DNA from: Oikopleura dioica
Taxonomy: Eukaryota; Animalia; Chordata
Reading direction: 5' to 3'
Length of the DNA stretch: 64,000 nucleotides
Assembly: GCA_907165135.1 (NCBI GenBank)
Contig: OU015567.1
Coordinates: 13,268,001-13,332,000 of the forward strand
This document shows, one piece after another, positions 1-47,400 of this stretch (positions are counted from its first letter, which is position 1; the number at the start of each line of letters is the position of its first letter). The position numbers and the translations under genes are program-made. The notes under the pieces were generated by a model. It was not told the origin of the DNA. It was given only the letters and a program-made list of their open reading frames with translations, and did no database searches.

Positions 1-718
1 TGTGGATACCCGCCGTTTTATTCTGACCACGGTTTCTCCATTTCTCCGGGGATGAAAAAGAGGATTAGACAAGGTATAACCTTTTACTGATGAAGATTTT
101 CCTAAGGCTTGCTCTAAGGTGAATACACTTTTCCCGACAAAGAATGGAAGAACATTTCACTAACGGCCAAAGATCTCATCAAGCGAATGCTGACTGTAGA
201 TGTCAACAAGCGAATCGACATTTACGAGTTTATGAACTCTCCTTGGGTGGCAAATGTTCGCGAAGTTCCTTCCACCCCGCTATTTACTTCGGCAAATATG
301 ATGGAAGACCCGGATTGCTACCGGTAAGTTCGTTTCCGAGAGCGGCTTTTTGAAATTGAAAAATTGTAGAGAAACGCAGCGGGAAATGGAAAGCGCGTTG
401 CAAACAATGCGAGTCGACAACAAAGTGAAAATCCGCGATGTGAAGCATTCAAAGAACCGTCTGATCGAGCGCCGCAAGCAGAAGAAAATGGAAGCTGGAG
501 CGGCTCCTCAGCAAAAAGTAACAGGTACGCCTTGCTCTTGATTTCCGCTCTAGAAACGCTTAGTAGCTCGAAATATCCTAAATCTCGCAGGTCCACGTCG
601 TAAAGTGACCACCTTGAAACTAGCAACAGGGACGAGCCAGGCGATCCCCGAGGAAAGCGAGGAATTACCCAACAAAAGTAGCCATTTTTCAATTTTGCAC
701 TGTCGCTCAAATATCTGA
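1..718 (+). CDS. MAPKAPK2: MAP kinase-activated protein kinase 2/3, C-terminal part (5' end outside window)
   Basis: Spliced translation CGYPPFYSDHGFSISPGMKKRIRQG|EYTFPDKEW...R|ETQREMESALQTMRVDNKVKIRDVKHSKNRLIERRKQK matches the MK2 kinase C-lobe and NES/NLS tail. GT-AG introns at 74-118, 324-369 and 525-590. Last exon and stop uncertain. Confidence 0.9.
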
Positions 719-33600: not shown

Positions 33601-34027
33601 TTGAACTGTTTGAGGTGGCTGGTCGGTTTGGGAAGAATCGTGCAGCTGTGGCTATAATTGCTGTTTAGAAATTGGAGGTTTCTAAGGAAAAAATCCAACT
33701 TTCCGCGCTGGTTCACTAATCAAAGATGAGTACTCTCGCCAAAGAACTCCGAGAAGTCCGAAGAAATAAGTTTCAAAAGCGAGTCCTTGGAAATTGAAAC
33801 CTGCGAAAAATCCTTTCATGACTAAATCGAAAAGCTCTCTTTACAGTGGACTACGAAACAGATTGATATGTAAGAATTTCATCTAGAGAAATGGTGAAAT
33901 CGAATGAAACGATCTCTAGAATCAAACAAGAAACCCGATTTCCAGTAAGAGGTTCTTTTTCCTTCGAAGGGGATTGACGATTCCGGATTGTGGAAGTGAT
34001 TAATTGTAAGGCACTGTAAGCCATTTA

Positions 34028-35000
34028 CAGTGAAACCCCAACTTAAGGCCCAGCAACTTAAGGCCACTTTTTTGAAAAAACCCCAAAATCTGTCATCCGA
34101 AAAAAATCCAACTTAAGGGGGTAGAACTAGATTTTCGGAAAAACCGTGATTTTCGGAGGGCACTTTAAATAAGAAAAACCTGTTTTTACTTGTGATTACG
34201 CAATTTCCTCAAAAATGTTGCTAGATAAATGGTTAAACTATCTTAAAATGAGATTTAAAAAATTTGGCTGGTCACGTGACTCGATATATTTGAGGACGCG
34301 AATACGCAAAAATTGCGATTTTCGAAGAGATGGGTTGACGTTTCGCTCTCTAGCGCCAAAATGTGTTGACGAAAAAAAATTTTAAGAAAAATGTTGTTAG
34401 ATCTAAGTTTGTTCTTTCTTCAACCGAAGAGAGAATTTGAAAATCTAAGCTCTCCTCGCTTTGAGCGCCGGTCTAGAATCGGCTATTTTCGAAAAACCTA
34501 GTTCTACCCCCTTAAGGCCACTTTTTTCCATTTTTATTCACAGTAAGTAAATCGCAGGAAAACAGGCGAGAAATGGGGAAGATAAGATATTTTTCGTAAA
34601 AATTTTCTTGGAATTTCTTTCAAATATAATATAAAGAAACTTTTATAGTTGAAACTGTCTGTAGACATGATAATAACGAGAAAAAACTTCTAAATTTTGA
34701 TTCATCAAGGAAAAATTTAAACCGTGAAATTTTAGTTTACAGGCCTGCAAAGCCTGTGAAACCCGAAAAAACAGGACCTGTTCCTGTGTTTTTTATCCTG
34801 TCCTGTTTCCTGTTTCGCAGATGGGCCAAAAAATAAAATCCCTGTTCCTGTGTACAGGATTCCGAGGCCAGATTCAGTCCCTTGCTCCAGAAATAGAAAA
34901 ATTTTAGCGTCATCCAACTTAGTTGGAGAATCACCCAACTTAAGGCCACTTTTCAAATTAGCTGTCATCCAAAAAGTGGCCTTAAGTTGGGGTTTCACTG
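34028..35000. mobile_element. Non-autonomous Tc1/mariner/pogo-type element (MITE), 973 bp
   Basis: Perfect 23-bp TIR CAGTGAAACCCCAACTTAAGGCC (34028-34050 and 34978-35000), TA on both sides (34026-27, 35001-02), several subterminal AACTTAAGGCCACTTTT repeats. Confidence 0.92.
34117..34511. mobile_element. TTAA-target MITE (Kolobok-like termini), 395 bp, nested in the Tc1-type MITE
   Basis: 14-bp perfect TIR GGGGGTAGAACTAG/CTAGTTCTACCCCC with imperfect extension; TTAA duplication at 34113-16 and 34512-15. Removing it restores the host repeat CCAACTTAAGGCCACTTTT. Confidence 0.9.
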
Positions 35001-38000
35001 TATACTGCAAATACGCTGATGTGAAAATATAAACCGAGCTTCTTACATGAAAACGCCTTGTAATTGAAGTTAGAATGAGCGATATAAAAATAGCCAAGCA
35101 TGAAATCGTTGAAGAAGAAACAACTGGCTCGTTTAGAACGAACTCAAAGAAAGGGTAATGCGTTGGATAATTCGCCCTCCGCTGCGAGAGGCCCTTAAAA
35201 CGAGCGCATCGCGCATGCGCGCAGTGCAGCTACCCTAAAGCTCGCTTTCCCCGTCAGAGAATGAAAGCTTTACTGCACAGCGCGCTTTACCACACCCGCC
35301 GCTCAAGTTCATGATTTCAGATGTTTTTTTCTGAAACATTCTATTAAACACTCTTACAGTTCCAGTAATTCAACAATTAGACTACTGATCATTAGATCTC
35401 CATATCATCTAACTTCATGAAAAACATCGAGTGTTTTAAATCCTTCTGAAGAGCGTAAATCATTGAGTTTAGTTTTCTCATTGAATGTACTCGAAAATGA
35501 CCACCGGAGCCTTTAAAAGTTGCTCTGTGTTTCTTTCTAGTGCTCACGATAAACAAGAAAGGCTCATTAACATGTGTAAAAATTCCACCTTTAAGTTTAT
35601 GAAAATTCAACTTTTGGAGAGGTCGTCCACCGCGCGCTCCATTATCGCCAAAGTAAGCGCCTTCGGTGGAAAAAAGGGCAGCGCAAATTCAATTCGCAGC
35701 GCTGCGGCGGAGCGGGGCAGCGTATAACGCCACGGCGGACTTGACATCCTTAATTTTGGCGAGGCTCCCTAACTCACGGGACTTGCTACTTGTACGGAAC
35801 GCGCGCGCGTTTCCCGAGAGCGGCGAATAGTAATTATACAGACACGCGTTGAAAAACTGCGTTCTTGGCGTTAATGGATATTCAGGAACCGGGGTTTATC
35901 GGGGGATGAATGTTTGTCTCGAAACCCGTAAATATCGACTAGAGGCTGAATATGACTGTAACAATTAGAGTACTCGAGTAGATCTGAATAAGATCATCTT
36001 CAGTAAACTTTGAAACAACAAAAATTTGCCACAAAGATGAGGAATTGTTGTTTGAATGTGGCGGTTGTCTTAACGCCAGAGCTAGTCGTATGGATAGTTC
36101 CCAGTGTGACGTGCGAGCGGTCTGTCGGGCCGAAGCGCGTTTCTACCCGCGCCTTCCAAAAGTCACGTGGCCACCCTAGCTTAGAGCTGCGCTGGAGCCA
36201 TACTGCGTGCACTCGCGCTCAAACCCGCTACTAACCACCCTAGACTCCAACCAACTCAACTCAAGACCGGTCAGCTTGCTTTTTAGCGGATTACCGCCGG
36301 TAGTTTCCACTTGAGACAAAATTTAAGAGACGACGGGATGAAATCTGATGTTTACTGTAAACTGCATTAAGCACATGATGGTATTTTGTTTCCAAAGGGT
36401 CTTCATAAATCATCCGACATATTTTTTATAATGAAAAGCTCGAGAATGGGATTAAAATAGATATCCCGTACTTTGGGAGACATAGAAGATTACCACAGAT
36501 GTGTGGGTCAAAAAAATGTTTTACCTCATCTTGTACTGGCGCTGGAGTCGAAATGGGTTGCGTTACGATCGGCTGGACAGCTACACCATTCATTCTATTT
36601 TTCTAGCGCTTCTAATCTTCGTGGAATCTCTCGAAAACCGCCAAAAGTGCGATTTTCGTACTCAAAACAACCAGCTATCGCCTTCTTCTTCGTCTAGAAA
36701 TCTTCGTGGGGTCGAGGGAAACCTCTCTGTGTTGAAAATTTGGTCTTGGAAGGAAATTTATTTTGGGAAATAATTTTTGTTCCTTTTGCGCGATTTCTGC
36801 GCGTTGTGGCGGGGTGTTTAGCGTGTCGGGCGGGCGGCGGTAGCGCATCGGGACGGGTAGCGGCCGAGCGCGAGCTCAAACCAAAAAATTGAGAATTCAC
36901 AGGCTTAGCTTGCTCTAACCGAGCTCAAGATCTGAACGAGGGTCTTTTTTCATCATATTAATTTAGTTGAACCAACATTTGTTTCCAAGGATTCTTCGTA
37001 ACGAAAAATATTTTGTTGGTCAAATTTAATTTAGCTTCAATTATTTACAGAAATGAGCTGTCATCATTTCTGTTTTCCATTCAGATTTTTATTTACTTGA
37101 CTTATGACAGTTTTCTTTTGTTTCGAAAAATACTGTTATAAAGATATTTTGGCTATTTACTGAATTTTGATAAAATGGGTTGATAGATCAAATAAGACAT
37201 TGATTTTTCAATTGAAAGTAATAAATACGGAAGTTTGGATTCTTGCGATCACCCTAAAAGGAATCCTTTTTGAATTGAGTCCGCAGCGGCAGCGGCGCTT
37301 TCTGGCTCTCTCGCGCGTTTGTGTGACGACCGCGGGGCGGCAGCGCAAAACGACGCGCTTCTCAGATCTCAGAAGAGCTCTTTTATGCTTCATCCTCACT
37401 TTTTGGCAGCTTTCTCGGTACGATACAAATTCATCTCTAAATCGAGAATCGACTTCATACATTCTAGCAGAATACATGTCAATTGCAAACTACAAATTTA
37501 ACTGTGCAAGATACGAAGTTTAAATGACCACAAATTTGGTTCACATGTGAAAATGAGTTAATCTCTAAAATGCGTTTTCCTATGCAGATTTTATATCGTA
37601 ATTTCCTTATTTTCAGGCTCTGAAGAGTCTTGCTAGTAAATATCGATATGTTTTATAAATCGTACACGTTGAGAAAAGCGAGTTTATCTACGTCAGACTC
37701 CGTATCTGCAAGTTCTAGCAGACGATAAAAGCCAATCTCGCTCTTGAAGTGTTCATTTAGCCTTGCTTGAGTGCGCAGCCCTGTTCAAACAAGCGATTTT
37801 TTTCTAGCGATAAATAAAGTGAGCGTAATAAACAAATGGCCTCAAATTTCAAGCTTGGATTCATTTAACCCCAGCGTTCATATTTACTAGATTTTTGTCA
37901 CCCTTGTTAGGGGTTTGAAGCTGGGAGCTTTTTATATGAGTATTGGAAAATTTCAGCCATCTTTAGTGCGTCATTTACGGTTCCGTTAAGTCATGCAGAG

Positions 38001-40521
38001 CTCATAAAAACTGATCCGGTCAGGAACGAACGCCAAATGTCTCACTGCTCCTAATCCAGAGATATTTTAAGAAAGCAACCACTTCAAGCTAAGGGCGTTA
38101 TTTTTTTGACCTGCTCGAACAATACCAATATTTCCCGCCGTAATCCTCCCAGCAAGCCACTTGCAAAGTGCCCGCGATTTTTTAGAACAGCCAGAAATGC
38201 AAAAAGAGCAAGGGCGTTGGCAACACGAAAAATCTTTCAATAAAGAATCTGAAAAATATTTCATTTATAAATTATAAAATAAAGTAAACGCGTCTTGAAT
38301 GAGCAGTAAATGGCTTGTTTGTTGTTTTAATATTTATGCATCGAAAATGATGAGAAAGGAAAAGAGAGGAGCTACAACCAAGAGCTTGACATTCCGCGGT
38401 ACCCCAGTCTTGAAGTCTTCCCTCAACGCTTCCGGCCCATTAGAAAACCAAGGCTCGAGAGCCGATTCATATGTAGAGCTGGCTATTCCCAAAACAACAG
38501 CGCATCCTGCTTACTGTAATCAGACTCTCTTTTAAAAATAATCAATCGTAAATTTTCCATTATTTTATTTGTTGATTGTTCAGATCATCGAAAACGATAT
38601 CGGAAATACGAGTATGGATTTGAATTCAGCCATTTGAGTTGAAGATATATTTCTCCACGCACCCTAGAGCCTAATCTTCAGTTGATTGTCATTGAGTAGC
38701 TACGGAATCAGGGCGGTTTTGGCGATTTCGGGCGGCGAAGGGGCCTCGCGCTCTACAGCGTCACAAGTGGGCCGCTCGCCGAGCGCTAACGCTTAGTTGT
38801 TAAAATCGCCCATTTTGGTTATTCCTCGCCCTAATTTACAACCCTCAAATATAAGAGGTGTTCTATTTGGATAAGTCAAAATATAAACAGGATTCACAAT
38901 AAATTATTCTCACATAATAAGTTACTCTCGTAACTCATCAATTAATTATTGATATTCAATGTTAAACAAATCGGTTAGAATTTCTTTGAACATTTTTGAA
39001 AGCGCGGCTTAAATACCGTATTTCTGAAAAAAAAAATCGGGAGCGAAAAAAGACTAAAATATGAATTGAACTTGAAAATTGAACCGTGGCGACCCTAGAC
39101 GCTATTAGCGCTGGGGCCCGCTGTGTGGATCTTGTACCACACGCGGTAAATACCTTTGGCCAAAGATAATACTGTTAAAACGAAGTTTATTCGAAGTAAT
39201 TGCTCGAATATCAACCAGTTAAAGATAAGAGTATGAAGGCCTTATCTTTCAGTATTCTCGAGAAGAAATACAATTTGATTAATTTCATGAATTCTTTTAA
39301 AAAATGAAAGCGTAAAAGGAGAATTGAGATCTTTATCGCAGCTTTTATACATCATCAAAGAAAAAGAACATTATGAGAACTCTTGAGAATCTTTAACTTC
39401 ACTTTTTGTATCATTTTAAAATTCATAAGAAAAAAGTTTACAGATTTTTTTATCAAAATTGTGGATGACACTTGTCAATTAAGAGATTTAACTTTTTAAC
39501 TGTTGAGAAATCTGCCTTTTGCGTTTTGGTATCCACAAGGTGGAGCGGGTCGTTGGAGGTGTTTTCCTCAGTCAGCAGATTGGCGCGATGCGTGTTTCAG
39601 CGAAGTTGCGCGGAGGTGCGCGCTGGTCTGGTGCTCCGCGGCGAGGAACGAGGAAACATGCTGCAGTAGGGCGGAGCTAAGCGCGCTCTCCGCCACACGC
39701 CCAGCAGTGTGGTGCCGCCGCGGCTAAAAGATCGCTCAAACCCGCACTCCTCCGCCAAACAGTATCCGCTTTAGCCCTACTCCAGCCACAATTCAACTAA
39801 AGCGACTCAGCACAGATTCACTGTAACACTTCAGTTCTTCTCTGTGTTAAAAAGATCAATAATTGGTCTCTGAACTGGATAATCTTCCACCTAAAAAAAT
39901 TTAAGCAAGAGGATGTGGTTTTCGTATCGTGGTTTTTCTGCGAGAACTTCTTTTTCAACAAAATTTTTCAATGAAAGATCTGAAGTGGAGCGCTCTTTTC
40001 TCAGAGTATTTTTGCAATAACGATAAAATTTCAGAGCCGCGACCGCTAATTCTAGTGTGCGGAAAAACTGAGCATAAAAGCATCTTAACGATAAATGAAA
40101 AAGCCAGGGGATCTTTTTACGATGTAGTTCTGGAACGTGAAACTTGTCAGGATTCAGACGTTTTGTGGTTTTTGTAGATCTATTTACGTAAAACTATAAA
40201 ATGTATTGTCAAAATAAGCATCTGACTGTTTTTAACAAGTAAGATCAAGCAAAGATGTCTCTCTTCCATGATTTCAAAGATGAAAAAAAAATAAAAATAT
40301 ACATCTTCTTATGCCAAAATTGATAAGTAATAAGGTTGACAATTGGGAAGGTGTAAACGAAAAACTTCTTTTTTTACTTTTAAAAGTACTCAGCGCGCGG
40401 AGGAACATTGCACAACGTAAATATTGAATCGATCCTGAAGAACAACGCAAGTTTTTCATTGGCTGGAACCGAGCCAATAGTCCTTCGATCATTATTTTAG
40501 AATTCCTCTCCACAACTAGAG

Positions 40522-42948
40522 ATGAGAAGGAATAAAAATAAGAAACATTTTTATATAGCCAAAGCTTTGGGTCCCAATTGGTCGAAAAGGATAAAAAAAT
40601 CCATCATCTCTGACTGGCTGTTTAAACTTCTACCAACGCTGAAGAGAAATACAACTCGCACTGAAAAATGCAGACTTATACTTTCTGTTGAAAGAGGCGA
40701 GTATCCTGGCGCGGATTATGCTGCTATTTATTGGACCTTTTTCAACTTTGAAACTCGCGAAGTAGGCTCACTTTGGAAGATAAACGATGGAGAAGAAGAA
40801 AAACTCGCTAGTTTCTCGACAACAACTTTTCAAAAATATCTTCTTGACCGCAACCCGAGATTCATCAATACAAAAATTTTCCGAGAGGAACTAAGGCCTG
40901 AACTTGGTTCTTGGGACACTTCTTGTAGGGACAGTTCCGGTGGAGAATCGATAATTGGCAATGAAAACGACCAATTTGATGCTTTTTACCGAGTTCAGCA
41001 TTTCGATCCGTGTCTTTTTACGTCTGAACTTCAAGCTGACGATCTTGAATTTGTTATTCACCAGCCTAACGGTAAAATTATAAAGGTTTTCTATCCATTT
41101 ATTAAAAAGTTAAGAATACAGAAAAGCGACTGGAACTGTAAGGTTCTTTGATCATTTAGCAATAAATCCATCTGACTTGGATAACGAAGATGACTGCATC
41201 CCAATTCATCCAAATGTCATCAAAAACTTCGCGAATATCGAAATTTTCTTGAAGTCGGATTCTGATAAAAGCGATTGTCTCGGATGGATAACGATCATGG
41301 AAAGAGGACAAAACAGAAATTTAAGAAGCCGTTTGCGATCTGAGTCTTTGACAATCGAGCAACGACGGGAAATCGCGATACAAGTACGGGCAGGACTAGA
41401 CTATCTGGCACTTATTGGGATAAAACATTGCGATCAGAAACTTGAAAACATTGTTCTCGTTGGTCGAGATCTAACTCCTAAATGGATAGATTTTGGCGTT
41501 GTTTACGATCACTCGGGCCGCACGGGATATCGAGAAATGGGTTATGTTCGAAGAGGAGACAAGTTCCGATACTGTCAGAGTCTCTCAGCTGCGACTCCAG
41601 GATTTTGTAGAGTCAGTAAAGTTTTGGGAAACCCGAAATACAATCATCGTGATCGTCCCATAAATAAGACTCTTATTGAACAGTTCGATCAAGAAATCGA
41701 AAAATTTGATTGTGGCATGGACTATTACTGGTATCATGATCCCCTCAGAGACATAGACAGATATCACACTGGGAAAATTGAAATACCGATTTTAGTTTTT
41801 CTTTTCTGTGATTGGAAGACAGCATGGAATCTTCTTTTCCGACCAACAACTGAATTAGAAGATGCACATATTCTCACACTACTTGAGCGTTGTAATCTTT
41901 TCTGGCTTGTTCATTTATCTCCAGACTCGAATAATATACCCGATGCGGCCTTTAGAAGTGTGAGTTCTGTTTTTTCTCTCCCAAGAAATGATGCAAGTTT
42001 CGTTCTGGACAGTAATATCACGAAATCAATTCAAATGTCAGAAATGAAGTTTGAATTTACGACGTTCTTCCACGAAGGTTTTCAGAATATCACAAAGCAT
42101 GTTGTTGATCAAAAAGACTCAGCTTTATGTGTACCAGTATGTGTGGCAAATCTACTCTGTAGTGCGATTCTAGAGTGCGTTAAAACGAAGAGACTTCCTA
42201 GCTATCTTCATGAAGATTGTTTTGATGTTGAAAAAGTGAAAGAAGCTTTCAGCTTCACAAGAATCTTTCACTTCATAACATTTTTGATATATCCAAGAAG
42301 CCTGGCTGGCATGAACTTGAATCCTAATCTTGATGAAATTCAGAAGCAGTATTCACAGCGTATCGAAGGTATCTTGGAAAGTTTAAAGAATGGACCTTAT
42401 GCCCGAATGCCTATGTGGAATTGGATGTTGGGCGCCATTGGAAAGCATTATCTAGATCGTCATTTTCTTTTTGACAGTAAATTGATTTTTCATAGAGGTT
42501 TGTGAAAAAAAAATTTCTAATGATTATTATTAATTTATATTTTTCTTAAGTTCAGTTACACAGAAGATTCAAATTCAAACGCCCACTTACTGTTACCGCC
42601 GCTCTCAAAGACGAAAATGAATTAATACAGCATCAAATGATCATTGACAGGGTGGAGGATACGGAATATGTACTACAAAATACCCAATCTGACGAAAATA
42701 ATGATGTTGAGATCCGTATTCCGTTATCTCGAGAATACTACAGCGAAACTTGTACTCACGAAAGATTTCCCCGAAAGGTAATTTCTTTCTTCGCCATGGA
42801 GCCAAACTGTTGGTACCTCTATCCGTACGCTTATTCTATTGAAATCGAGTTGGACAAAGAGGAATCTTCTGACGAAGGCTTACTTTTATTTCAACATACT
42901 CTCCGACTTCTTCATAATCTCGCCGAAGAAGACGACGAAGAAGAATGA
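40522..42948 (+). CDS. Divergent protein kinase fused to a C-terminal papain-like (clan CA) domain, 776 aa
   Basis: Exons 40522-41071, 41115-42497, 42551-42948 (GT-AG, in frame, 2331 nt). Kinase motifs HPNVI, HCDQKLEN, IDFG. C-terminal DQKDSALC, HQMII and YVLQN. Confidence 0.8.
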
Positions 42949-43086
42949 GCAACTTTTTCCTGCAAAATAAAAATGAAAATCCGATTTACTTTGCTATTAT
43001 TTTCATTAGTAAAGTTACCCGCGAATTGTATAAAAATAATCTCTTTATTATAATAAAATATTGTCGGTATAAATGAAAAGCTTAGT

Positions 43087-44335
43087 TTATGAAACATATT
43101 GAAGAATATTACAGTTGGATAGCTTTAGTTTCTGCACAAGTTCTGTTGCGCGAGTCTTGATCGAGTCGTTCGGTTCACCGATTCGTTCGCTAAACCAAGC
43201 CAGGGTTGTGAGTGCTTTTGCGGTGCTCTGAGACTCGGCTGAGATTGATTCCATCGTCTTAAAATTGATATGAGTATTTGTAAAAGAGTTATAAAGTTAC
43301 TTCTGCAATCGCCTTGAGCATGTTAAAAGTCTCGCCCTTTTCTAACACCGGAATATCCAAATTCTCATCTGCCAAAAGTTGAAGCCAGCAGTCGAGCGTC
43401 CTCTCGTAGAAACTAATCGCAACTTGCATCATTCCTGGATTTCGGGCGGCCATATTCGCCAAGTTGAAATATCCACAAGCGGCGCCGATTGATTCTGTTC
43501 CAGCCCACAGCGAAGCGTAAAATACTTGTTCTGCGAATAGTCTTAAAAACCAAATTTGTCTATCTTTTGATATCCCAAAATTACCTTGATGCATCTTCAG
43601 TATTTCCCTTGGCTGCTTCAAGCAATCCCATGGCCCGGTAAAGCCGAGAAAAGACTTGGTTAATTGTCTCATCTTCTTGATTACGTTTGATAACCCAGTT
43701 CGCTTTTTGCAGGTGCTGGTCCGCTTCACGGTGTTTGTTAAGTCCGATGCAGATTTCCGCCAAAAGAGTGTACGCTGGTATTAATCGCAAATCGTTCACT
43801 CCGTAAATGTCGCCCGCTAGGACGAGAAACTGTTGAGCTGCGAGCAAGGCATGAGCGTGATTTCCTGACTGTAATAATGCTGAAAACAGTTAGCATTAGA
43901 ATTCCGAGGCCTCAGAATACCTAAAGCTGTGACGGTAGAAAGCTCCAATATTTTTTCCTGTTTCATTAGTAAATTCTCTTGATTCATTCTGGCTTTTGTT
44001 GATGATGTGATAAATGTTGTTGCCTAAAATAATCGTCTAATCTGCCGTTTTCTTCCTTGTTTTCAGTGAGTAAGTTGAAGACTTACTGATGTTTTGATAG
44101 ATGAAGTTTTTTTCTTCTCAGCAAAGGCGGCCCGGGAAAGTAAGGATTCCAAGTACTCGGGATACAACTGCCCGATAGCTTCTCCTATATTCGTTTCACC
44201 CAGGGCCTTGGTTTCGCCCAAGATTTTGGTCAATTTCAAAAGGCAGACAGATGCTTCTGCCAATCGGCGCTGCTTAACTGTCCCATCTCTTGCTTGTCTA
44301 ATGCAGTGATTTGCGAGTCCCTCATCGAAAGTCAT
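43087..44335 (-). CDS. ZMYND12: ZMYND12-like TPR/helical axonemal protein, apparently lacking the MYND finger
   Basis: LLQSGNHAHALLAAQQFLVLAGDIYGVNDLRLIPAYTLLAEICIGL...HLQKANWVI...SRLYRAMGLL...VFYASLWAGTESIGAACGYFNLAN parallels vertebrate ZMYND12 as recalled (LYGLSSVELVPAYLLLAEASLGL...SLLHRNLGLL...GGYFHLAN). Confidence 0.75.
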
Positions 44336-44431
44336 TCTGAAAGTTAAACATTTGAAGGAGAGAAAATATAATTGTTGAAAATAGATTATATTTATTATAA
44401 AAATAGAGATTATACAGGTGAAATAAAGGAA

Positions 44432-47400
44432 TTAGTAATCAAGAGAACACATGAGCGCAGTAGCGCGTCGAATCCAATGATTTTCGTCCTTGTCGGTCGG
44501 CAGCTCGACTGGCATGACGAAGTTGGTGGAGTGACCAGTCGTCGAAAGAGTACCAGCTCGAGTGATGGTCTTGTAGATCGGACAGGTGTAGATTCCAGAT
44601 TCTTTCTTTTTGCGATTTGGAACTGGGATCAAATGCATCGCAGCCATATCGGTGTAGAGCTCCTTTGGACGCGATTCAGCAAGCTAAAACGATTGATTAA
44701 AACCGCTCTTGCAAATCTAAATCTTACAATCTGTTTGTCTACATCCCAAATAGCCGCTTCCAAGAACAAGCCTCTGATGTAACATCCATCATCTGGCGCC
44801 TTCTGAACACGCTCCCATTCATCAAGCGGACCGGGAAGGACAGCAAAGTCGAATCCAATCGTATGAATAGATACTTGCACTTTTCGTGCAAAGTTCTGAA
44901 GAGTACCAGTGATGAAAGCTTGTGGGAAGAAGAATCCGGAGATCCAGAAGACAGCTGGGGTACCGTTGTCGACCCAATTTTGGATAAACTGGCATCGCTC
45001 AACAAGATCTTTTACCCATGCACCGAGGGGCTTGAGGGATGGATACGCGCATTTTGACCAGTTCGCTGGGACTTGATTGTCGAAGAGAGAGTTGAACATC
45101 TTTTCAAGTGCATCAGACATAACAACGAGACCTAAAATAAATTATCAATAGAATAAGATGTTAGTTATGAGCTTCAAGTAATTGAGATTTTACATTTGGT
45201 ATTCTGTTTTCATGCTTATTTTTTTATAATTGGTGGTGGGATTTGTACCGAGCATGGTTTATCCGGAGCGATGACACCCCCAGAAGGGGAACACTGCCCA
45301 GAACAGGAATATGCCCGGCTGGCGGCGACCGTGCTTCCGAAGAAGCAGGGAGTCGCCACACGTTAATTCTCGAGACTGCGACCTTGACATCACATGTGGT
45401 CTTAGATTTGACCGACGCCAAATTGCCGCTCGGGCAGACTCAACGAACAGTTCAAGCTCGTCGAGGGCACACCCTCGCCTCGAAAGCTTATTGGCCAAAA
45501 ATAATTAGAAATAGTTCAAGAACATATGCCGATTATGGTTTCTAGCGTTTTACTAATTTATCATAGCTTTTACTTTTTAGGCCGACATTAAATTTAAAGA
45601 CGCACGCTGTTCTCACAATAAAGCTAGAAATTTACCTTTGATAGCCATTTGCATCTGGCTGAGCGAGCTCTTCATGACATTCAGCAATTTATTGAATCTT
45701 TCTGCTTCTTGTTGCAGAACAGTATTCATGGATTCTTCATACATGACTGGGTACTTATTCATGATTCCTTCCAAGTCGAATACAGGTGGTAACTGGCCTT
45801 GAATCTCCGTTGCAAGCTTGGAAACCACGTCTTCTCGTGAAATACCACCAGAAGCGGATCGCGGCTGGAGGGCGAGAAGAGTGTTGAGGAGGAACATAGT
45901 CTGATTGTTGGCGTAAGCGATATCAGCGTTATCGTGAAGGCCGAAAACATCTGGCTTGTCGTTGATCGGCAAAGTTCTGTAGTAATTCATGTAGTCGGCG
46001 AACTCGGACTCGGCTGGATCGATTTGAACGAAGATTTCGGACGGATCGAAAATGTAGCCTGTCTCGAGAACGGCGGGCTTGTAGAATTCACCAAGGATGG
46101 ACATCATGCATCGTCGATCCCAATCGTCAGTAACACGACCTAAACAAGAATGTTATGTGTTGAAAGAATTGTGGTTTCTTACCTCCGTAGTTGATGTGAC
46201 CGGCTGTGTAAGTCAAAACCTTGTAAGGCACTTCTGGCTCGTATTCATCCAAGAACATTCGCAACTGCGACTGACAGATTCGAAGATCTCCATCCGTAAA
46301 TTCGTACGGAATGTTGAAACCGAGGGAGCCATACTTTCTGCGCTCAAGGAGAACACCGTGCACCATGCAAAGAGAGAAGAGGAGAGTCTTGAAGATATTT
46401 GGCGTCTTGCACGCTTCGAGGAAGTCATCATCGACAACCATGGTCGTGTACGCCTTGAGCAGATTGGCTTTGATTCCACGAGGAGGCTCCATCGTCATTT
46501 TAGAGCCATTCTGCAGGACAGAGACCGGGAACTTGTTCGAAGGCATCGAAGTCAGCCAAATTCGGAAATCGCGATGAACAAATTCAGGGGAGATGTTTTC
46601 AATCAGTCGTTCCAAGCTAGGCATCCAAGATGGCGCCAAGTGACAGTTCTGGAAGAATACCCACTGTCCTCGTTCCATCGCTGATTTCATCAAAGCTTCG
46701 GCGATCGGGCCCTGACCTTGGCCGAGCGAGATCGAATTCATTTTCTTGGTGAATTTCTTTGCCTCTGCGAATTTGTGCAAATCAGCAGCAGGATCTGTAC
46801 CGGACGAGAGGACGAAAATAAGAGCCGATGTTGGGGAGGATTCTGCGAATACCTCAGCCAAATCAGTGCTCTGCGGCTCGATGAATCGTTGGCCAAGATT
46901 AGCTGCGACGTAGTCTTGAACTGCGTTCGTAATTTTGTCCGACCGAAGCATTCTCAACACGATCATTTTCGCGAGGCCATCGTTGAGTTCTTCTTTGACG
47001 GGCATGTCCATTTTGTGCGGGTTCGGGTTTTCATAAATTTGACGCCAGACGTCTTCTTTCTCAATAAACTCTTGCGGGAATCCTTTGAATCGATCAATCG
47101 AGTATTCCATTTGAAGAAGCTCCATCCATGATTTGTCTGGAACCCATTCGGGCTTTTTCAACTCCGATTCGGGCAACGCAGCTGAGCCTGCAAGAAGATA
47201 TCGGAATTCCATAGGATTGATGACTGCATCGTTGAGTTGAATGCGAATGCAGACGAGGAAGGCAAACATGAGCTTGTGTCTTTCGAAGAGGGATCGACAG
47301 ACGTTGCAATAGAGCGAGAATGTCATGAACGAGTTGATATTTGCAATTCGCTCGTCGATGTCGTCTGATCGCTCGGCGTTGGCGATCGCGTTGACGAAGA

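What the first reader, a model, noticed from the sequence alone, without database searches (positions are those of the whole stretch)
40522..42948. Protein kinase fused to an apparently intact papain-like cysteine protease
Seen after splicing: the kinase domain (HCDQKLEN catalytic loop, DFG, TPGF in place of APE) is followed by D-Q-K-D-S-A-L-C (Q 42110, C 42128), then H-Q-M-I-I (H 42631) and Y-V-L-Q-N (N 42679). Established: papain has Q19/C25 (6 apart) and H159/N175 (16 apart, YILIKN). Both spacings are reproduced exactly here, with Cys and His about 150 aa apart. There is no signal peptide or propeptide, so the protein would be cytosolic. I know of no animal kinase-C1 protease fusion. It could be a lineage-specific signalling or defence enzyme, or TE/virus-derived.
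Basis: partly seen in the sequence, partly recalled or inferred. Interest (0 to 1): 0.78.

Follow-up and report, generated by a model that had tools for sequence, protein, structure and literature searches.

The report
Kinase fused to papain-fold protease
This three-exon gene of an Oikopleura-type tunicate joins an unusual protein kinase to a very divergent cysteine protease of the papain fold in one chain; it is an intact, conserved member of a large undescribed gene family seen only in Oikopleura and marine metagenomes, and no experiment has tested its function.

Summary
All motifs sit at the stated coordinates. The kinase C-lobe and the Cys-bearing half of the protease lie in one uninterrupted exon, so the fusion is not a gene-prediction artefact.

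- **Introns:** Intron 42498-42550 is supported by comparison with a 95%-identical metagenome orthologue and by the same position and phase in two paralogues. I place the first intron at 41072-41114, giving a 776-aa protein. RNA reads gave no test.
- **Family:** The gene belongs to an Oikopleura-restricted family: 34 hits in the word search and 192 clusters in the exhaustive search.
- **Protease residues:** They are almost invariant across the family: Gln 89/91, Cys 89/91, His 88/92, Asn 102/112.
- **Protease fold:** AlphaFold models of paralogue P0003 put the Cys at a helix N-terminus and the His in a beta-strand. At least 45 of the 50 best structural matches are clan CA cysteine peptidases (C1 Z up to 10.2, C39 Z 9.3). 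No sequence model (Pfam, NCBIfam, PDB profile) detects a peptidase, so C1 membership is not supported.
- **Kinase:** It has a true kinase fold and keeps HxD, Lys, Asn and DFG, but always has Arg at the beta3 lysine position.
- **Origin:** I found no support for a transposon or viral origin.

The scan has already reported this family on other DNA of this genome. Function is untested.

The parts
40522..41071 (+). Exon 1 (ATG 40522). It encodes an N-terminal alpha/beta domain with the family motif T-R-T-E-K-C-R-L (40654-40677), then the kinase N-lobe: G-loop S-G-G-E-S (40936-40950) and beta3 F-Y-R-V with Arg codon 40990-40992.
   Evidence: An in-frame stop lies 8 codons upstream. tblastn with P0003 covers 40573-41046.
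41072..41114 (+). Intron 1 (43 nt, GT..AG, phase 1). This is my placement.
   Evidence: Same position and phase as intron 1 of paralogues P0003 (41 nt) and P0023 (40 nt). The acceptor at 41114 restores the conserved [DE]-[YF]-x-K-A motif as E-Y-R-K-A. A 1-nt indel against three metagenome contigs falls inside it, and 41111-41215 is 105/105 identical. No RNA confirmation.
41115..42497 (+). Exon 2, one open frame of 461 codons. It holds the rest of the kinase and the N-terminal half of the peptidase domain.
- Kinase: HPNVIKNF 41207-41230; HCDQKLEN 41426-41449; DFG 41489-41497; TPGF 41594-41605; a 45-aa insertion specific to this gene and its metagenome orthologue, about 41651-41791; CDWK 41807-41818.
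- Linker: about 41990-42106, conserved, with N-I-T-K at 42014-42025 and 42086-42097.
- Peptidase: Gln 42110, Cys 42128.
   Evidence: Kinase and peptidase share one exon, so the fusion is physical.
42498..42550 (+). Intron 2 (53 nt, GT..AG, phase 1).
   Evidence: 71.7% identity plus 5 indel bases against L001, compared with 95.5% and 91.5% and no indels in the flanking exons. The position and phase are conserved in P0003 and P0023. The joined reading aligns to paralogues without gaps (and inspection).
42551..42948 (+). Exon 3: the C-terminal (beta-sheet) half of the peptidase domain. It carries His 42631 and Asn 42679, the terminal strand C-W-Y-L-Y-P-Y-A-Y-S (42808-42837), an acidic tail (about 42850-42945) and stop TGA 42946-42948.
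40921..41985 (+). Atypical protein-kinase domain (approximate limits, interrupted by intron 1).
   Evidence: Pfam PF00069 scores 32.8 bits against a cut-off of 31.7. The P0003 model matches kinases with Foldseek E about 1e-6 and VIA Z 9.2-11.6. Catalytic residues are invariant in the family.
42107..42849 (+). Clan CA (papain-fold) cysteine-peptidase-like domain (interrupted by intron 2).
   Evidence: Models of paralogue P0003. Structural matches are to C1, C39, C47, C78 and C54 peptidases.

Best explanation
This is an intact nuclear gene of three exons and 776 codons. I read it as a cytosolic protein with two enzyme domains, belonging to an Oikopleura-restricted paralogous family.

Domain order: a small N-terminal alpha/beta domain; a divergent, non-RD, Ser/Thr-type protein-kinase domain; a conserved Ser/Thr-rich linker that is predicted to be disordered; and a clan CA (papain-fold) thiol peptidase domain.

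Shown:
- the architecture
- the two folds, modelled on a paralogue
- family-wide conservation of both catalytic sets
- purifying selection on this copy

Inferred mechanism:
- The Cys at 42128 sits at the N-terminus of the central helix and acts as the nucleophile.
- The His at 42631 activates it, oriented by the Asn at 42679.
- The Gln at 42110 forms the oxyanion hole.
- The domain therefore hydrolyses peptide or isopeptide bonds.
- The kinase domain keeps the catalytic Asp, Lys, Asn and DFG, with an invariant Arg where kinases have the beta3 Lys. It binds nucleotide and either phosphorylates or senses.
- The two activities are coupled in cis, most plausibly through the conserved linker just before the catalytic Gln/Cys.

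The substrate and biological role are unknown. The size of the family, its fast divergence and its lineage restriction fit a signalling or defence role.
For: - **Architecture:** Kinase and protease halves lie in one ORF.
- **Kinase identity:** Pfam Pkinase scores above its cut-off. The full-length model of paralogue P0003 has pLDDT 78.2 and pTM 0.79. Its residues about 148-421 match kinases.
- **Kinase residues:** HxD Asp 33/33, Lys 33/33, Asn 33/33, DFG Asp and Gly 33/33 (Phe 32/33), beta3 Arg 33/35.
- **Protease fold:** In the C-terminal model the Cys starts a helix and the His lies in a strand. By their titles, 45 of the 50 best chains in an unbiased structural search are clan CA peptidases.
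- **Alignment register:** Ervatamin C gives Z 10.2, and the papain alignment runs 37..276 to 15..212. That register puts the family's Gln and Cys on papain Gln19 and Cys25. ComA aligns 41.. to 11...
- **Protease residues:** Gln 89/91, Cys 89/91, His 88/92, Asn 102/112 plus 2 Asp.
- **Selection on this copy:** The orthologue in Tara metagenome contigs keeps all four residues. Codon differences are 28 synonymous against 25 non-synonymous in exon 2, and 17 against 11 in exon 3, with no exonic indels. By inference that is a dN/dS of roughly 0.2-0.3.
- **Intron positions:** Both are shared with paralogues.
Against: - No RNA evidence for this copy.
- The fold evidence comes from models of a 39%-identical paralogue, not from this protein.
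- Structural Z scores of 9-10 are only modestly above the tool's background of 7-8.
- Foldseek alone was weak (best E 0.05).
- I could not measure triad geometry because no coordinates are returned.
- No sequence model recognises a peptidase.
- Lys-to-Arg at beta3 is a classical kinase-inactivating change, and the APE motif is absent.
- This copy carries a 45-aa insertion in the kinase alphaEF-alphaF loop and a 14-aa insertion after the catalytic helix.
- A few family members have lost the His (P0201) or the Asn (P0115), so non-catalytic use exists in the family.
Confidence: 0.8

Rival explanations
1. The C-terminal domain is a ubiquitin- or ubiquitin-like-specific isopeptidase, or a Gly-Gly-specific processing peptidase, not a general papain-type endopeptidase. 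The kinase would target or gate it. This refines the best explanation and does not exclude it.
For: The protein is cytosolic, with no signal peptide, propeptide or disulfide-rich C1 features. The structural neighbours include many Gly-Gly-specific clan CA enzymes: C39 PCAT1, ComA and LahT at Z 8.8-9.3, UfSP at 8.3, ATG4 at 7.6, ZUFSP at 6.4-7.2, and viral USP and PLP2. An earlier, unchecked scan note reports a paralogue with a UBA tail.
Against: C1A plant and lysosomal proteases score slightly higher and align over more residues (150-167 against 120-130). No ubiquitin-related domain appeared among 50 family members scanned. There is no sequence similarity to any DUB family.
Confidence: 0.3
2. 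One or both domains are pseudoenzymes. The protein would be a scaffold or sensor: a pseudokinase with Arg for the beta3 Lys, and/or a papain-fold binding module such as SERA5 or the HlyB C39-like domain.
For: - The beta3 Lys is replaced by Arg in 33/35 members, and APE is absent.
- Pseudokinases (ULK4, IRAK3) are among the best kinase matches.
- Pseudo-proteases (SERA5, C39-like domains) are among the fold matches.
- Some members have lost the His or the Asn.
Against: Near-invariance of Gln, Cys, His and Asn, and of the kinase Asp, Lys, Asn and DFG, across members that are only 25-50% identical overall is what catalysis predicts. A pure scaffold would not be expected to keep them.
Confidence: 0.2
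3. The papain-fold domain is a thiol enzyme of another chemistry that uses the same fold, such as a transferase, amidase, deamidase or phytochelatin-synthase-like enzyme, and is not a protease.
For: Fold matches include phytochelatin synthase Alr0975 (Z 7.5-7.8), pseudomurein endoisopeptidase PeiR (7.9), and CdiA-CT toxin and CtaG entries.
Against: These rank below the true peptidases. To my knowledge, the Gln-Cys-His-Asn set with Q-x5-C and H-x15-N spacing is the peptidase arrangement of C1 and C39.
Confidence: 0.1
4. This copy is an unexpressed or decaying paralogue, or a transposon- or virus-derived gene.
For: No RNA reads covered it in four RNA runs carrying the species label. It diverges faster than its downstream neighbour (95.5% and 91.5% against 98.0% identity to L001). 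Other copies in this genome are reported broken in unchecked scan notes.
Against: - The frames are open with no exonic indels, and non-synonymous change is depleted relative to the orthologue.
- Splice sites are kept.
- It is a single copy in the window and syntenic over 3.47 kb with the metagenome contig.
- Only a marginal, short (30-nt) similarity to the kinase-loop insertion occurs elsewhere in the window.
- The viral structure library gave no match with E <= 0.001.
- The RNA runs may come from a divergent lineage, so their silence is no test.
Confidence: 0.07

Closest known systems
Papain family (MEROPS C1, Pfam PF00112), e.g. ervatamin C, papain, cathepsin S
   Same: - Best structural matches: Z 9.3-10.2, 150-160 aligned residues, with a register that places the family's Gln and Cys on papain Gln19 and Cys25.
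- Same residue order, and the same Q-x5-C and H-x15-N spacing.
- Similar domain size (about 240 aa).
   Different: - No detectable sequence similarity.
- No signal peptide, no I29 propeptide, and no Trp after the Asn.
- Cytosolic context, fused to a kinase.
C39 double-glycine peptidase domains of ABC exporters (ComA, PCAT1, LahT)
   Same: Tied in the structural search (Z 8.8-9.3, rmsd about 3). The register of the ComA (41 to 11) and PCAT1 (41 to 15) alignments fits the same Gln-x5-Cys and His-x15-Asp/Asn arrangement; the C39 catalytic residue numbers are my recollection. The ESM Atlas shape search gives mostly C39 clusters (TM 0.38-0.43 by query).
   Different: C39 domains are about 130-150 aa, bacterial and attached to ABC transporters. 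There is no sequence similarity. The tunicate domain is about 100 aa larger.
Divergent or pseudo-kinases of the ePK fold (PINK1, ULK4, IRAK3/4, BRAF)
   Same: The kinase fold, at Z 10.3-11.6 over about 200 residues. HxD, Lys, Asn and DFG are retained. To my knowledge, Arg at the beta3 Lys position also occurs in the mammalian KSR pseudokinase.
   Different: - No sequence-level affinity to any kinase group; the best PDB sequence match is CDK9 at E 6e-5, covering only beta4 to DFG.
- It is a non-RD kinase, and APE is replaced (T-P-G-F then no A-P-E).
- It has an extra N-terminal domain and a C-terminal peptidase.

Membership tests
Clan CA (papain-fold) cysteine peptidases | Two-lobed fold with the nucleophile Cys at the N-terminus of the central helix and the His on a beta-strand of the second lobe | tested here: met
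   Models of paralogue P0003: the helix starts at the Cys, and the His lies in strand 614-626. At least 45 of the 50 top chains in an all-against-model search are clan CA peptidases, Z up to 9.6 and 10.2. The test was done on a paralogue, not on the window protein itself.
Clan CA (papain-fold) cysteine peptidases | Catalytic residues in the order Gln, Cys, His, Asn/Asp, present and conserved | tested here: met
   Window codons 42110, 42128, 42631 and 42679. Family counts are 89/91, 89/91, 88/92 and 102/112 plus 2 Asp. The residues are unchanged in the orthologue.
Clan CA (papain-fold) cysteine peptidases | Cys-His ion-pair geometry, and thiol-dependent hydrolysis that E-64 or alkylating agents inhibit | not testable with these tools
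   The tools return no model coordinates or PAE, and no biochemistry is available.
MEROPS C1 / Pfam PF00112 (papain family) | Statistically significant sequence similarity to family members | tested here: not met
   No PF00112 hit even at E 10 for the window pieces or for 10 diverse family members. The family profile against all PDB sequences found nothing relevant. NCBIfam found nothing. The only hint is embedding similarity to C1 clusters at 0.91.
MEROPS C1 / Pfam PF00112 (papain family) | Secretory zymogen organisation (signal peptide and I29-type propeptide), and the Asn-Ser-Trp motif after the catalytic Asn | tested here: not met
   There is no N-terminal hydrophobic segment and no Inhibitor_I29 hit. 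The Asn is followed by T-Q-S here and by N/T-Q-F in paralogues.
MEROPS C39 / Pfam PF03412, PF13529 | Sequence similarity to the family, and fusion to an ABC exporter | tested here: not met
   No Pfam hit. The architecture is kinase-linked, and no ABC domain is present. Structural similarity alone reaches Z 9.3.
Eukaryotic protein kinase superfamily (Pfam PF00069) | Profile match above the curated cut-off, and the bilobal kinase fold | tested here: met
   32.8 bits against 31.7 for window exon 2, and 35.9 for P0003. 33 of 50 members match. More than 500 Foldseek matches at E<=1e-3, and VIA Z up to 11.6.
Eukaryotic protein kinase superfamily (Pfam PF00069) | Full catalytic set: G-loop, beta3 Lys, alphaC Glu, HRD Asp, Asn, DFG, APE | tested here: inconclusive
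   The Asp, Lys, Asn, DFG and a G-G-E-[AS] loop are invariant. The beta3 Lys is Arg in 33/35 members, the HxD middle residue is never Arg, and APE is absent. Whether phosphotransfer occurs cannot be told from sequence.
Deubiquitinase and UBL-protease families of clan CA (USP, UCH, OTU, Josephin, ZUFSP, UfSP, ATG4) | Sequence or close structural similarity to one of these families, or an associated ubiquitin-binding domain | tested here: inconclusive
   Only fold-level matches at lower Z: UfSP 8.3, ATG4 7.6, ZUFSP 6.4-7.2. No Pfam hit, and no UBA or UIM in 50 members.

The most novel reading that the evidence does not exclude
The family is a previously unknown class of self-contained kinase-gated thiol (iso)peptidase switches. 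It would have been invented and expanded in appendicularians, with phosphorylation of the conserved linker just before the catalytic Gln/Cys turning proteolysis on or off. It would serve as a lineage-specific signalling, cell-death or innate-defence system in an animal that has lost many conventional pathways.
Probability: 0.15. Interest if true: 0.85.

Novelty: new variant of a known kind. Interest (0 to 1): 0.62.

Why it matters
Both domain types are familiar. I found no description of a kinase covalently joined to a papain-fold peptidase in an animal. The peptidase domain is invisible to Pfam, NCBIfam and PDB sequence searches, so public records call these proteins only 'protein kinase domain-containing'.

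The family has dozens of paralogues in a chordate model with a very compact genome, which suggests a biological role of some weight. If both activities are real, it offers a natural single-chain coupling of phosphorylation and proteolysis. It would also define a new clan CA family, and it gives a kinase lineage in which an invariant Arg replaces the beta3 Lys while the rest of the catalytic machinery stays conserved.

Tried and rejected
- **First intron 1 model:** I first took intron 1 as 41072-41159 (88 nt). I also considered 41138-41189 (52 nt) and 41138-41159 (22 nt). I rejected all three for 41072-41114, which alone fits the paralogue intron position and phase, restores the [DE]-[YF]-x-K-A motif, places the 1-nt indel in the intron, and puts the perfectly conserved 41111-41215 almost wholly (from 41115) in the exon.
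- **Hidden intron in the kinase loop:** I tested whether the 45-aa kinase-loop insertion is an unrecognised intron. The GT at 41616 with the AG at 41795 is 180 nt and in frame. Removing it would leave only 4 residues where paralogues have 19-22. The other GT/AG pair shifts the frame. Rejected.
- **Repeat or transposon in the insertion:** Only a marginal, short (30-nt) similarity occurs elsewhere in the window.
- **Sequence-model searches for the protease domain:** Pfam at E 10, NCBIfam and a PDB profile search all came back empty.
- **Foldseek against PDB:** With the C-terminal model alone it was weak (best hit staphopain, E 0.05). The exhaustive aligner was needed.
- **Viral structure library:** Nothing significant.
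- **Rfam on 36000-44000:** Nothing.
- **RNA reads:** Four runs gave no coverage of this gene.
- **Literature:** Six searches found no description. PMC3927609 mentions both Pfam names, but only for an unrelated cathepsin H example.
- **MAFFT artefact:** With separate exon rows, MAFFT mis-paired the end of exon 2 with the start of exon 3. Checking by length showed that the spliced reading aligns colinearly.
Full report
**What is in the sequence**

- HCDQKLEN at 41426-41449
- DFG at 41489-41497
- TPGF at 41594-41605
- D-Q-K-D-S-A-L-C at 42107-42130 (Gln 42110, Cys 42128)
- His 42631
- Asn 42679

The kinase C-lobe, a linker and the Cys-bearing half of the second domain lie in a single open frame. 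The fusion is therefore physical. It does not come from merging two gene models.

**Gene model**

Intron 42498-42550 (53 nt, GT..AG, phase 1) is supported in two independent ways.

First, three marine-metagenome contigs (L001-L003, from three ENA assemblies, one named TARA) carry a 94%-identical protein. L001 aligns to window 41100-44568 at 95.3%. In that alignment exon 2 is 95.5% identical and exon 3 is 91.5% identical, both without indels. The intron is 71.7% identical and has 5 indel bases. GT and AG are kept.

Second, I mapped the annotated paralogues P0003 and P0023 onto their own DNA (L004, L005). Both have an intron at exactly the homologous codon and phase: KFEK|I|LLH and EYIK|V|TLN, against IFHR|V|QLH here.

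For the first intron I end at 41072-41114 (43 nt, phase 1), for four reasons:
- The donor matches the position and phase of paralogue intron 1: NFEK|D|YEKA and LIS|D|FKKA, against HQPN|E|YRKA here.
- The acceptor restores the family's conserved [DE]-[YF]-x-K-A motif.
- A 1-nt length difference from all three metagenome contigs falls inside the intron.
- The stretch 41111-41215 is 105/105 identical.

The coding sequence is 550 + 1383 + 395 nt, which gives 776 codons.

RNA could not confirm this. Four RNA runs carrying the species label gave no coverage. The only reads were 19 from a paralogue on 41212-41246, at 90-95% identity and with foreign flanks. That shows a relative is transcribed and says nothing about this copy.

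**Family**

The word search with exon 2 found P0001 and a set of Oikopleura dioica proteins at about 37-40% identity, named only 'protein kinase domain-containing protein'. Searching with the C-terminal part of the full-length paralogue P0003 found 34 proteins.

An exhaustive profile search of 1.84 billion representatives with the C-terminal domain found 192 clusters at E <= 0.001. Most are exon-sized metagenome fragments. Among the 20 representatives I looked up, every cluster member that carries a name is O. dioica, and the rest are unnamed marine metagenome pieces. The 42 weakest hits were not listed, so distant relatives elsewhere are not excluded.

The window holds one copy.

**The C-terminal domain**

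No sequence model recognises this domain. I tried Pfam at E 10 on the window pieces and on ten diverse members, NCBIfam, and a family profile against all PDB sequences.

I therefore folded the paralogue P0003, with the window's exons as separate alignment rows. Two models resulted:
- The C-terminal model has pLDDT 63.7 and pTM 0.66.
- The full-length model has pLDDT 78.2 and pTM 0.79.

In both models:
- The conserved Cys is the first residue of a long helix.
- The conserved His lies in a beta-strand.
- The Asn follows the next strand.

Foldseek alone was weak (staphopain, E 0.05). The exhaustive aligner gave a list in which at least 45 of 50 rows are clan CA cysteine peptidases by title. The rows include C1 calotropain at Z 9.6 over 153 residues, C39 PCAT1 at Z 9.3 over 129 residues, and then C47, C78, C54, C10, C66 and ZUFSP entries.

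A second look raised ervatamin C to Z 10.2 and papain to Z 9.3. The papain alignment runs 37..276 to 15..212, and ComA aligns 41.. to 11... These offsets put the family's Gln and Cys on papain Gln19 and Cys25. By my recollection of ComA's catalytic residues, they also fall on ComA Gln11 and Cys17.

The ESM Atlas shape search and the embedding search point to C39 and C1 clusters.

These Z values are only modestly above the tool's stated background of 7-8. The weight of the argument lies in the uniformity of the list, the register, and the residue conservation.

Conservation across family rows that cover each column:

| Residue | Count | Exceptions |
|---|---|---|
| Gln | 89/91 | 1 Glu, 1 Phe |
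| Cys | 89/91 | 2 Ser |
| His | 88/92 | 2 Phe, 1 Tyr, 1 Asn |
| Asn | 102/112 | 2 Asp, 4 Met, 4 others |

Overall identity among these members falls to 25-30%. A Pro (96/96) and a Trp (97/100) between the Cys and the His are also near-invariant. A few members have lost the His (P0201) or the Asn (P0115). Apparently kinase-less members exist (P0157, P0200), though these may be partial gene models.

**The kinase domain**

Pfam Pkinase matches above its cut-off, but only over profile positions 75-149. The best PDB sequence match is CDK9 at E 6e-5.

The full-length P0003 model matches hundreds of kinases: Foldseek E about 1e-6, and VIA Z 11.6 for PINK1, 11.4 for ULK4, 10.9 for BRAF and 10.3 for IRAK3. 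There is no group affinity.

Family-wide counts:
- G-loop G-G-E-[AS]: 32/32
- Catalytic-loop Asp, Lys and Asn, and DFG Asp and Gly: 33/33 each (DFG Phe 32/33)
- beta3 Lys position: Arg in 33/35
- HxD middle residue: never Arg

T-P-G-F stands at the P+1 position and no APE follows. The window copy has all these features. Strict conservation of the catalytic loop argues for some nucleotide-dependent chemistry. Lys-to-Arg argues against ordinary kinase activity. I leave this open.

**Selection and integrity of this copy**

Against the orthologue there are 28 synonymous and 25 non-synonymous codon differences in exon 2, and 17 against 11 in exon 3. There are no exonic indels, and none of the catalytic residues changes. 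Non-synonymous sites are about three times as numerous as synonymous sites. By inference this implies a dN/dS of roughly 0.2-0.3, which is purifying selection.

The gene still diverges faster than the downstream neighbour, which is 98.0% identical.

This copy has no hydrophobic N-terminus. A subgroup of paralogues (P0003, P0004, P0014, P0016) does have one.

**Interpretation**

Three parts do not stand.
- **C1 family assignment:** C1 membership fails at the sequence level. The spacing argument is not specific to C1, because it fits C39 domains equally well, judging by the register of the ComA and PCAT1 alignments and my recollection of their residues.
- **Canonical kinase:** The kinase is not canonical.
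- **Mobile or viral origin:** Nothing supports it.

The most likely mechanism is a Cys-His-Asn thiol hydrolase acting on peptide or isopeptide bonds in the cytosol. It would be coupled in cis to an atypical kinase, possibly through the linker. That linker is strongly conserved yet predicted to be disordered, is rich in Ser and Thr, and lies directly before the catalytic Gln. All functional steps are inferred.

**Relation to earlier notes of this scan**

After I had reached this reading, a word search of the scan's notes showed that the same family has been reported many times on other DNA of this genome (28 notes). Those notes reach the same conclusion. Two notes describe accessory UBA or ankyrin-like parts in other copies. 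I saw none in 50 members. These are AI notes and do not count as independent evidence.

**Literature**

Six full-text searches found no description of the family or the architecture.

Noticed in passing
window 41990-42106 (P0003 residues 430-468): The linker just before the catalytic Gln/Cys is among the most conserved parts of the family (L, D, N, T, K, S and similar at 90% or more). Both models nonetheless predict it to be disordered (pLDDT under 50). It carries a repeated N-[LI]-T-K motif: two copies here at 42014-42025 and 42086-42097, and three N-x-T in P0003. Candidate roles are phospho-acceptor sites, a pseudosubstrate or a propeptide-like segment. The motifs are also N-glycosylation sequons, which would matter only if the protein is not cytosolic.
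   Followed up: partly
window 41651-41791: A 45-aa insertion in the kinase alphaEF-alphaF loop: 64 residues lie between TPGF and FLFCDWK, where paralogues have 19-22. The metagenome orthologue shares it. It is in frame, has no indels, and only a marginal 30-nt similarity to it occurs elsewhere in the window. I did not assess its effect on the kinase.
   Followed up: partly
window about 42158-42199: A 14-aa insertion (C-S-A-I-L-E-C-V-K-T-K-R-L-P) directly after the helix that carries the catalytic Cys. It is absent from all paralogues aligned and present in the orthologue P0001.
   Followed up: no
L001, L002, L003 (start of each), equivalent to window 41096-41100: Three contigs from three different metagenome assemblies all end within 4 nt of each other, inside intron 1 at an A-run. 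This suggests an assembly break, such as polymorphism or a repeat just upstream in that population. Exon 1 could therefore not be compared.
   Followed up: no
window 41212-41246: 19 RNA reads from three oligo-dT RNA-seq runs match only this 35-nt conserved HPNVIKNF-coding stretch. They match at 90-95% identity and have different flanks, so they come from a transcribed paralogue.
   Followed up: partly
P0003, P0004, P0014, P0016 N-termini: A subgroup of paralogues starts with a strongly hydrophobic 18-residue segment (Kyte-Doolittle 2.2-2.4 over 15 aa), possibly a signal peptide or membrane anchor. This window's copy and the deep-branching members P0195 and P0201 lack it.
   Followed up: partly
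P0201, P0115, P0147 (family members): P0201 has Phe in place of the catalytic His, and P0115 has Met in place of the Asn, so both are likely non-catalytic. P0147 joins the C-terminal half of the domain to a DnaJ domain, which is probably a merged gene model.
   Followed up: no
L004 2732-2769: The annotated model of paralogue P0003 needs a GC..AG intron of 38 nt. Its other introns are 37-78 nt long. The window gene has only two of the paralogues' four or five introns.
   Followed up: no
window 43289-44568 against 41160-42948: The downstream neighbour on the minus strand is 98.0% identical to the metagenome contig. The kinase-protease exons are 95.5% and 91.5% identical, so this gene evolves several times faster than its neighbour.
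   Followed up: partly
window 34000-40500: About 6 kb upstream of the gene has no ORF above 121 aa. It includes a G+C-rich patch at 39470-39760 that is open in several frames on both strands. Rfam found nothing in 36000-44000.
   Followed up: partly
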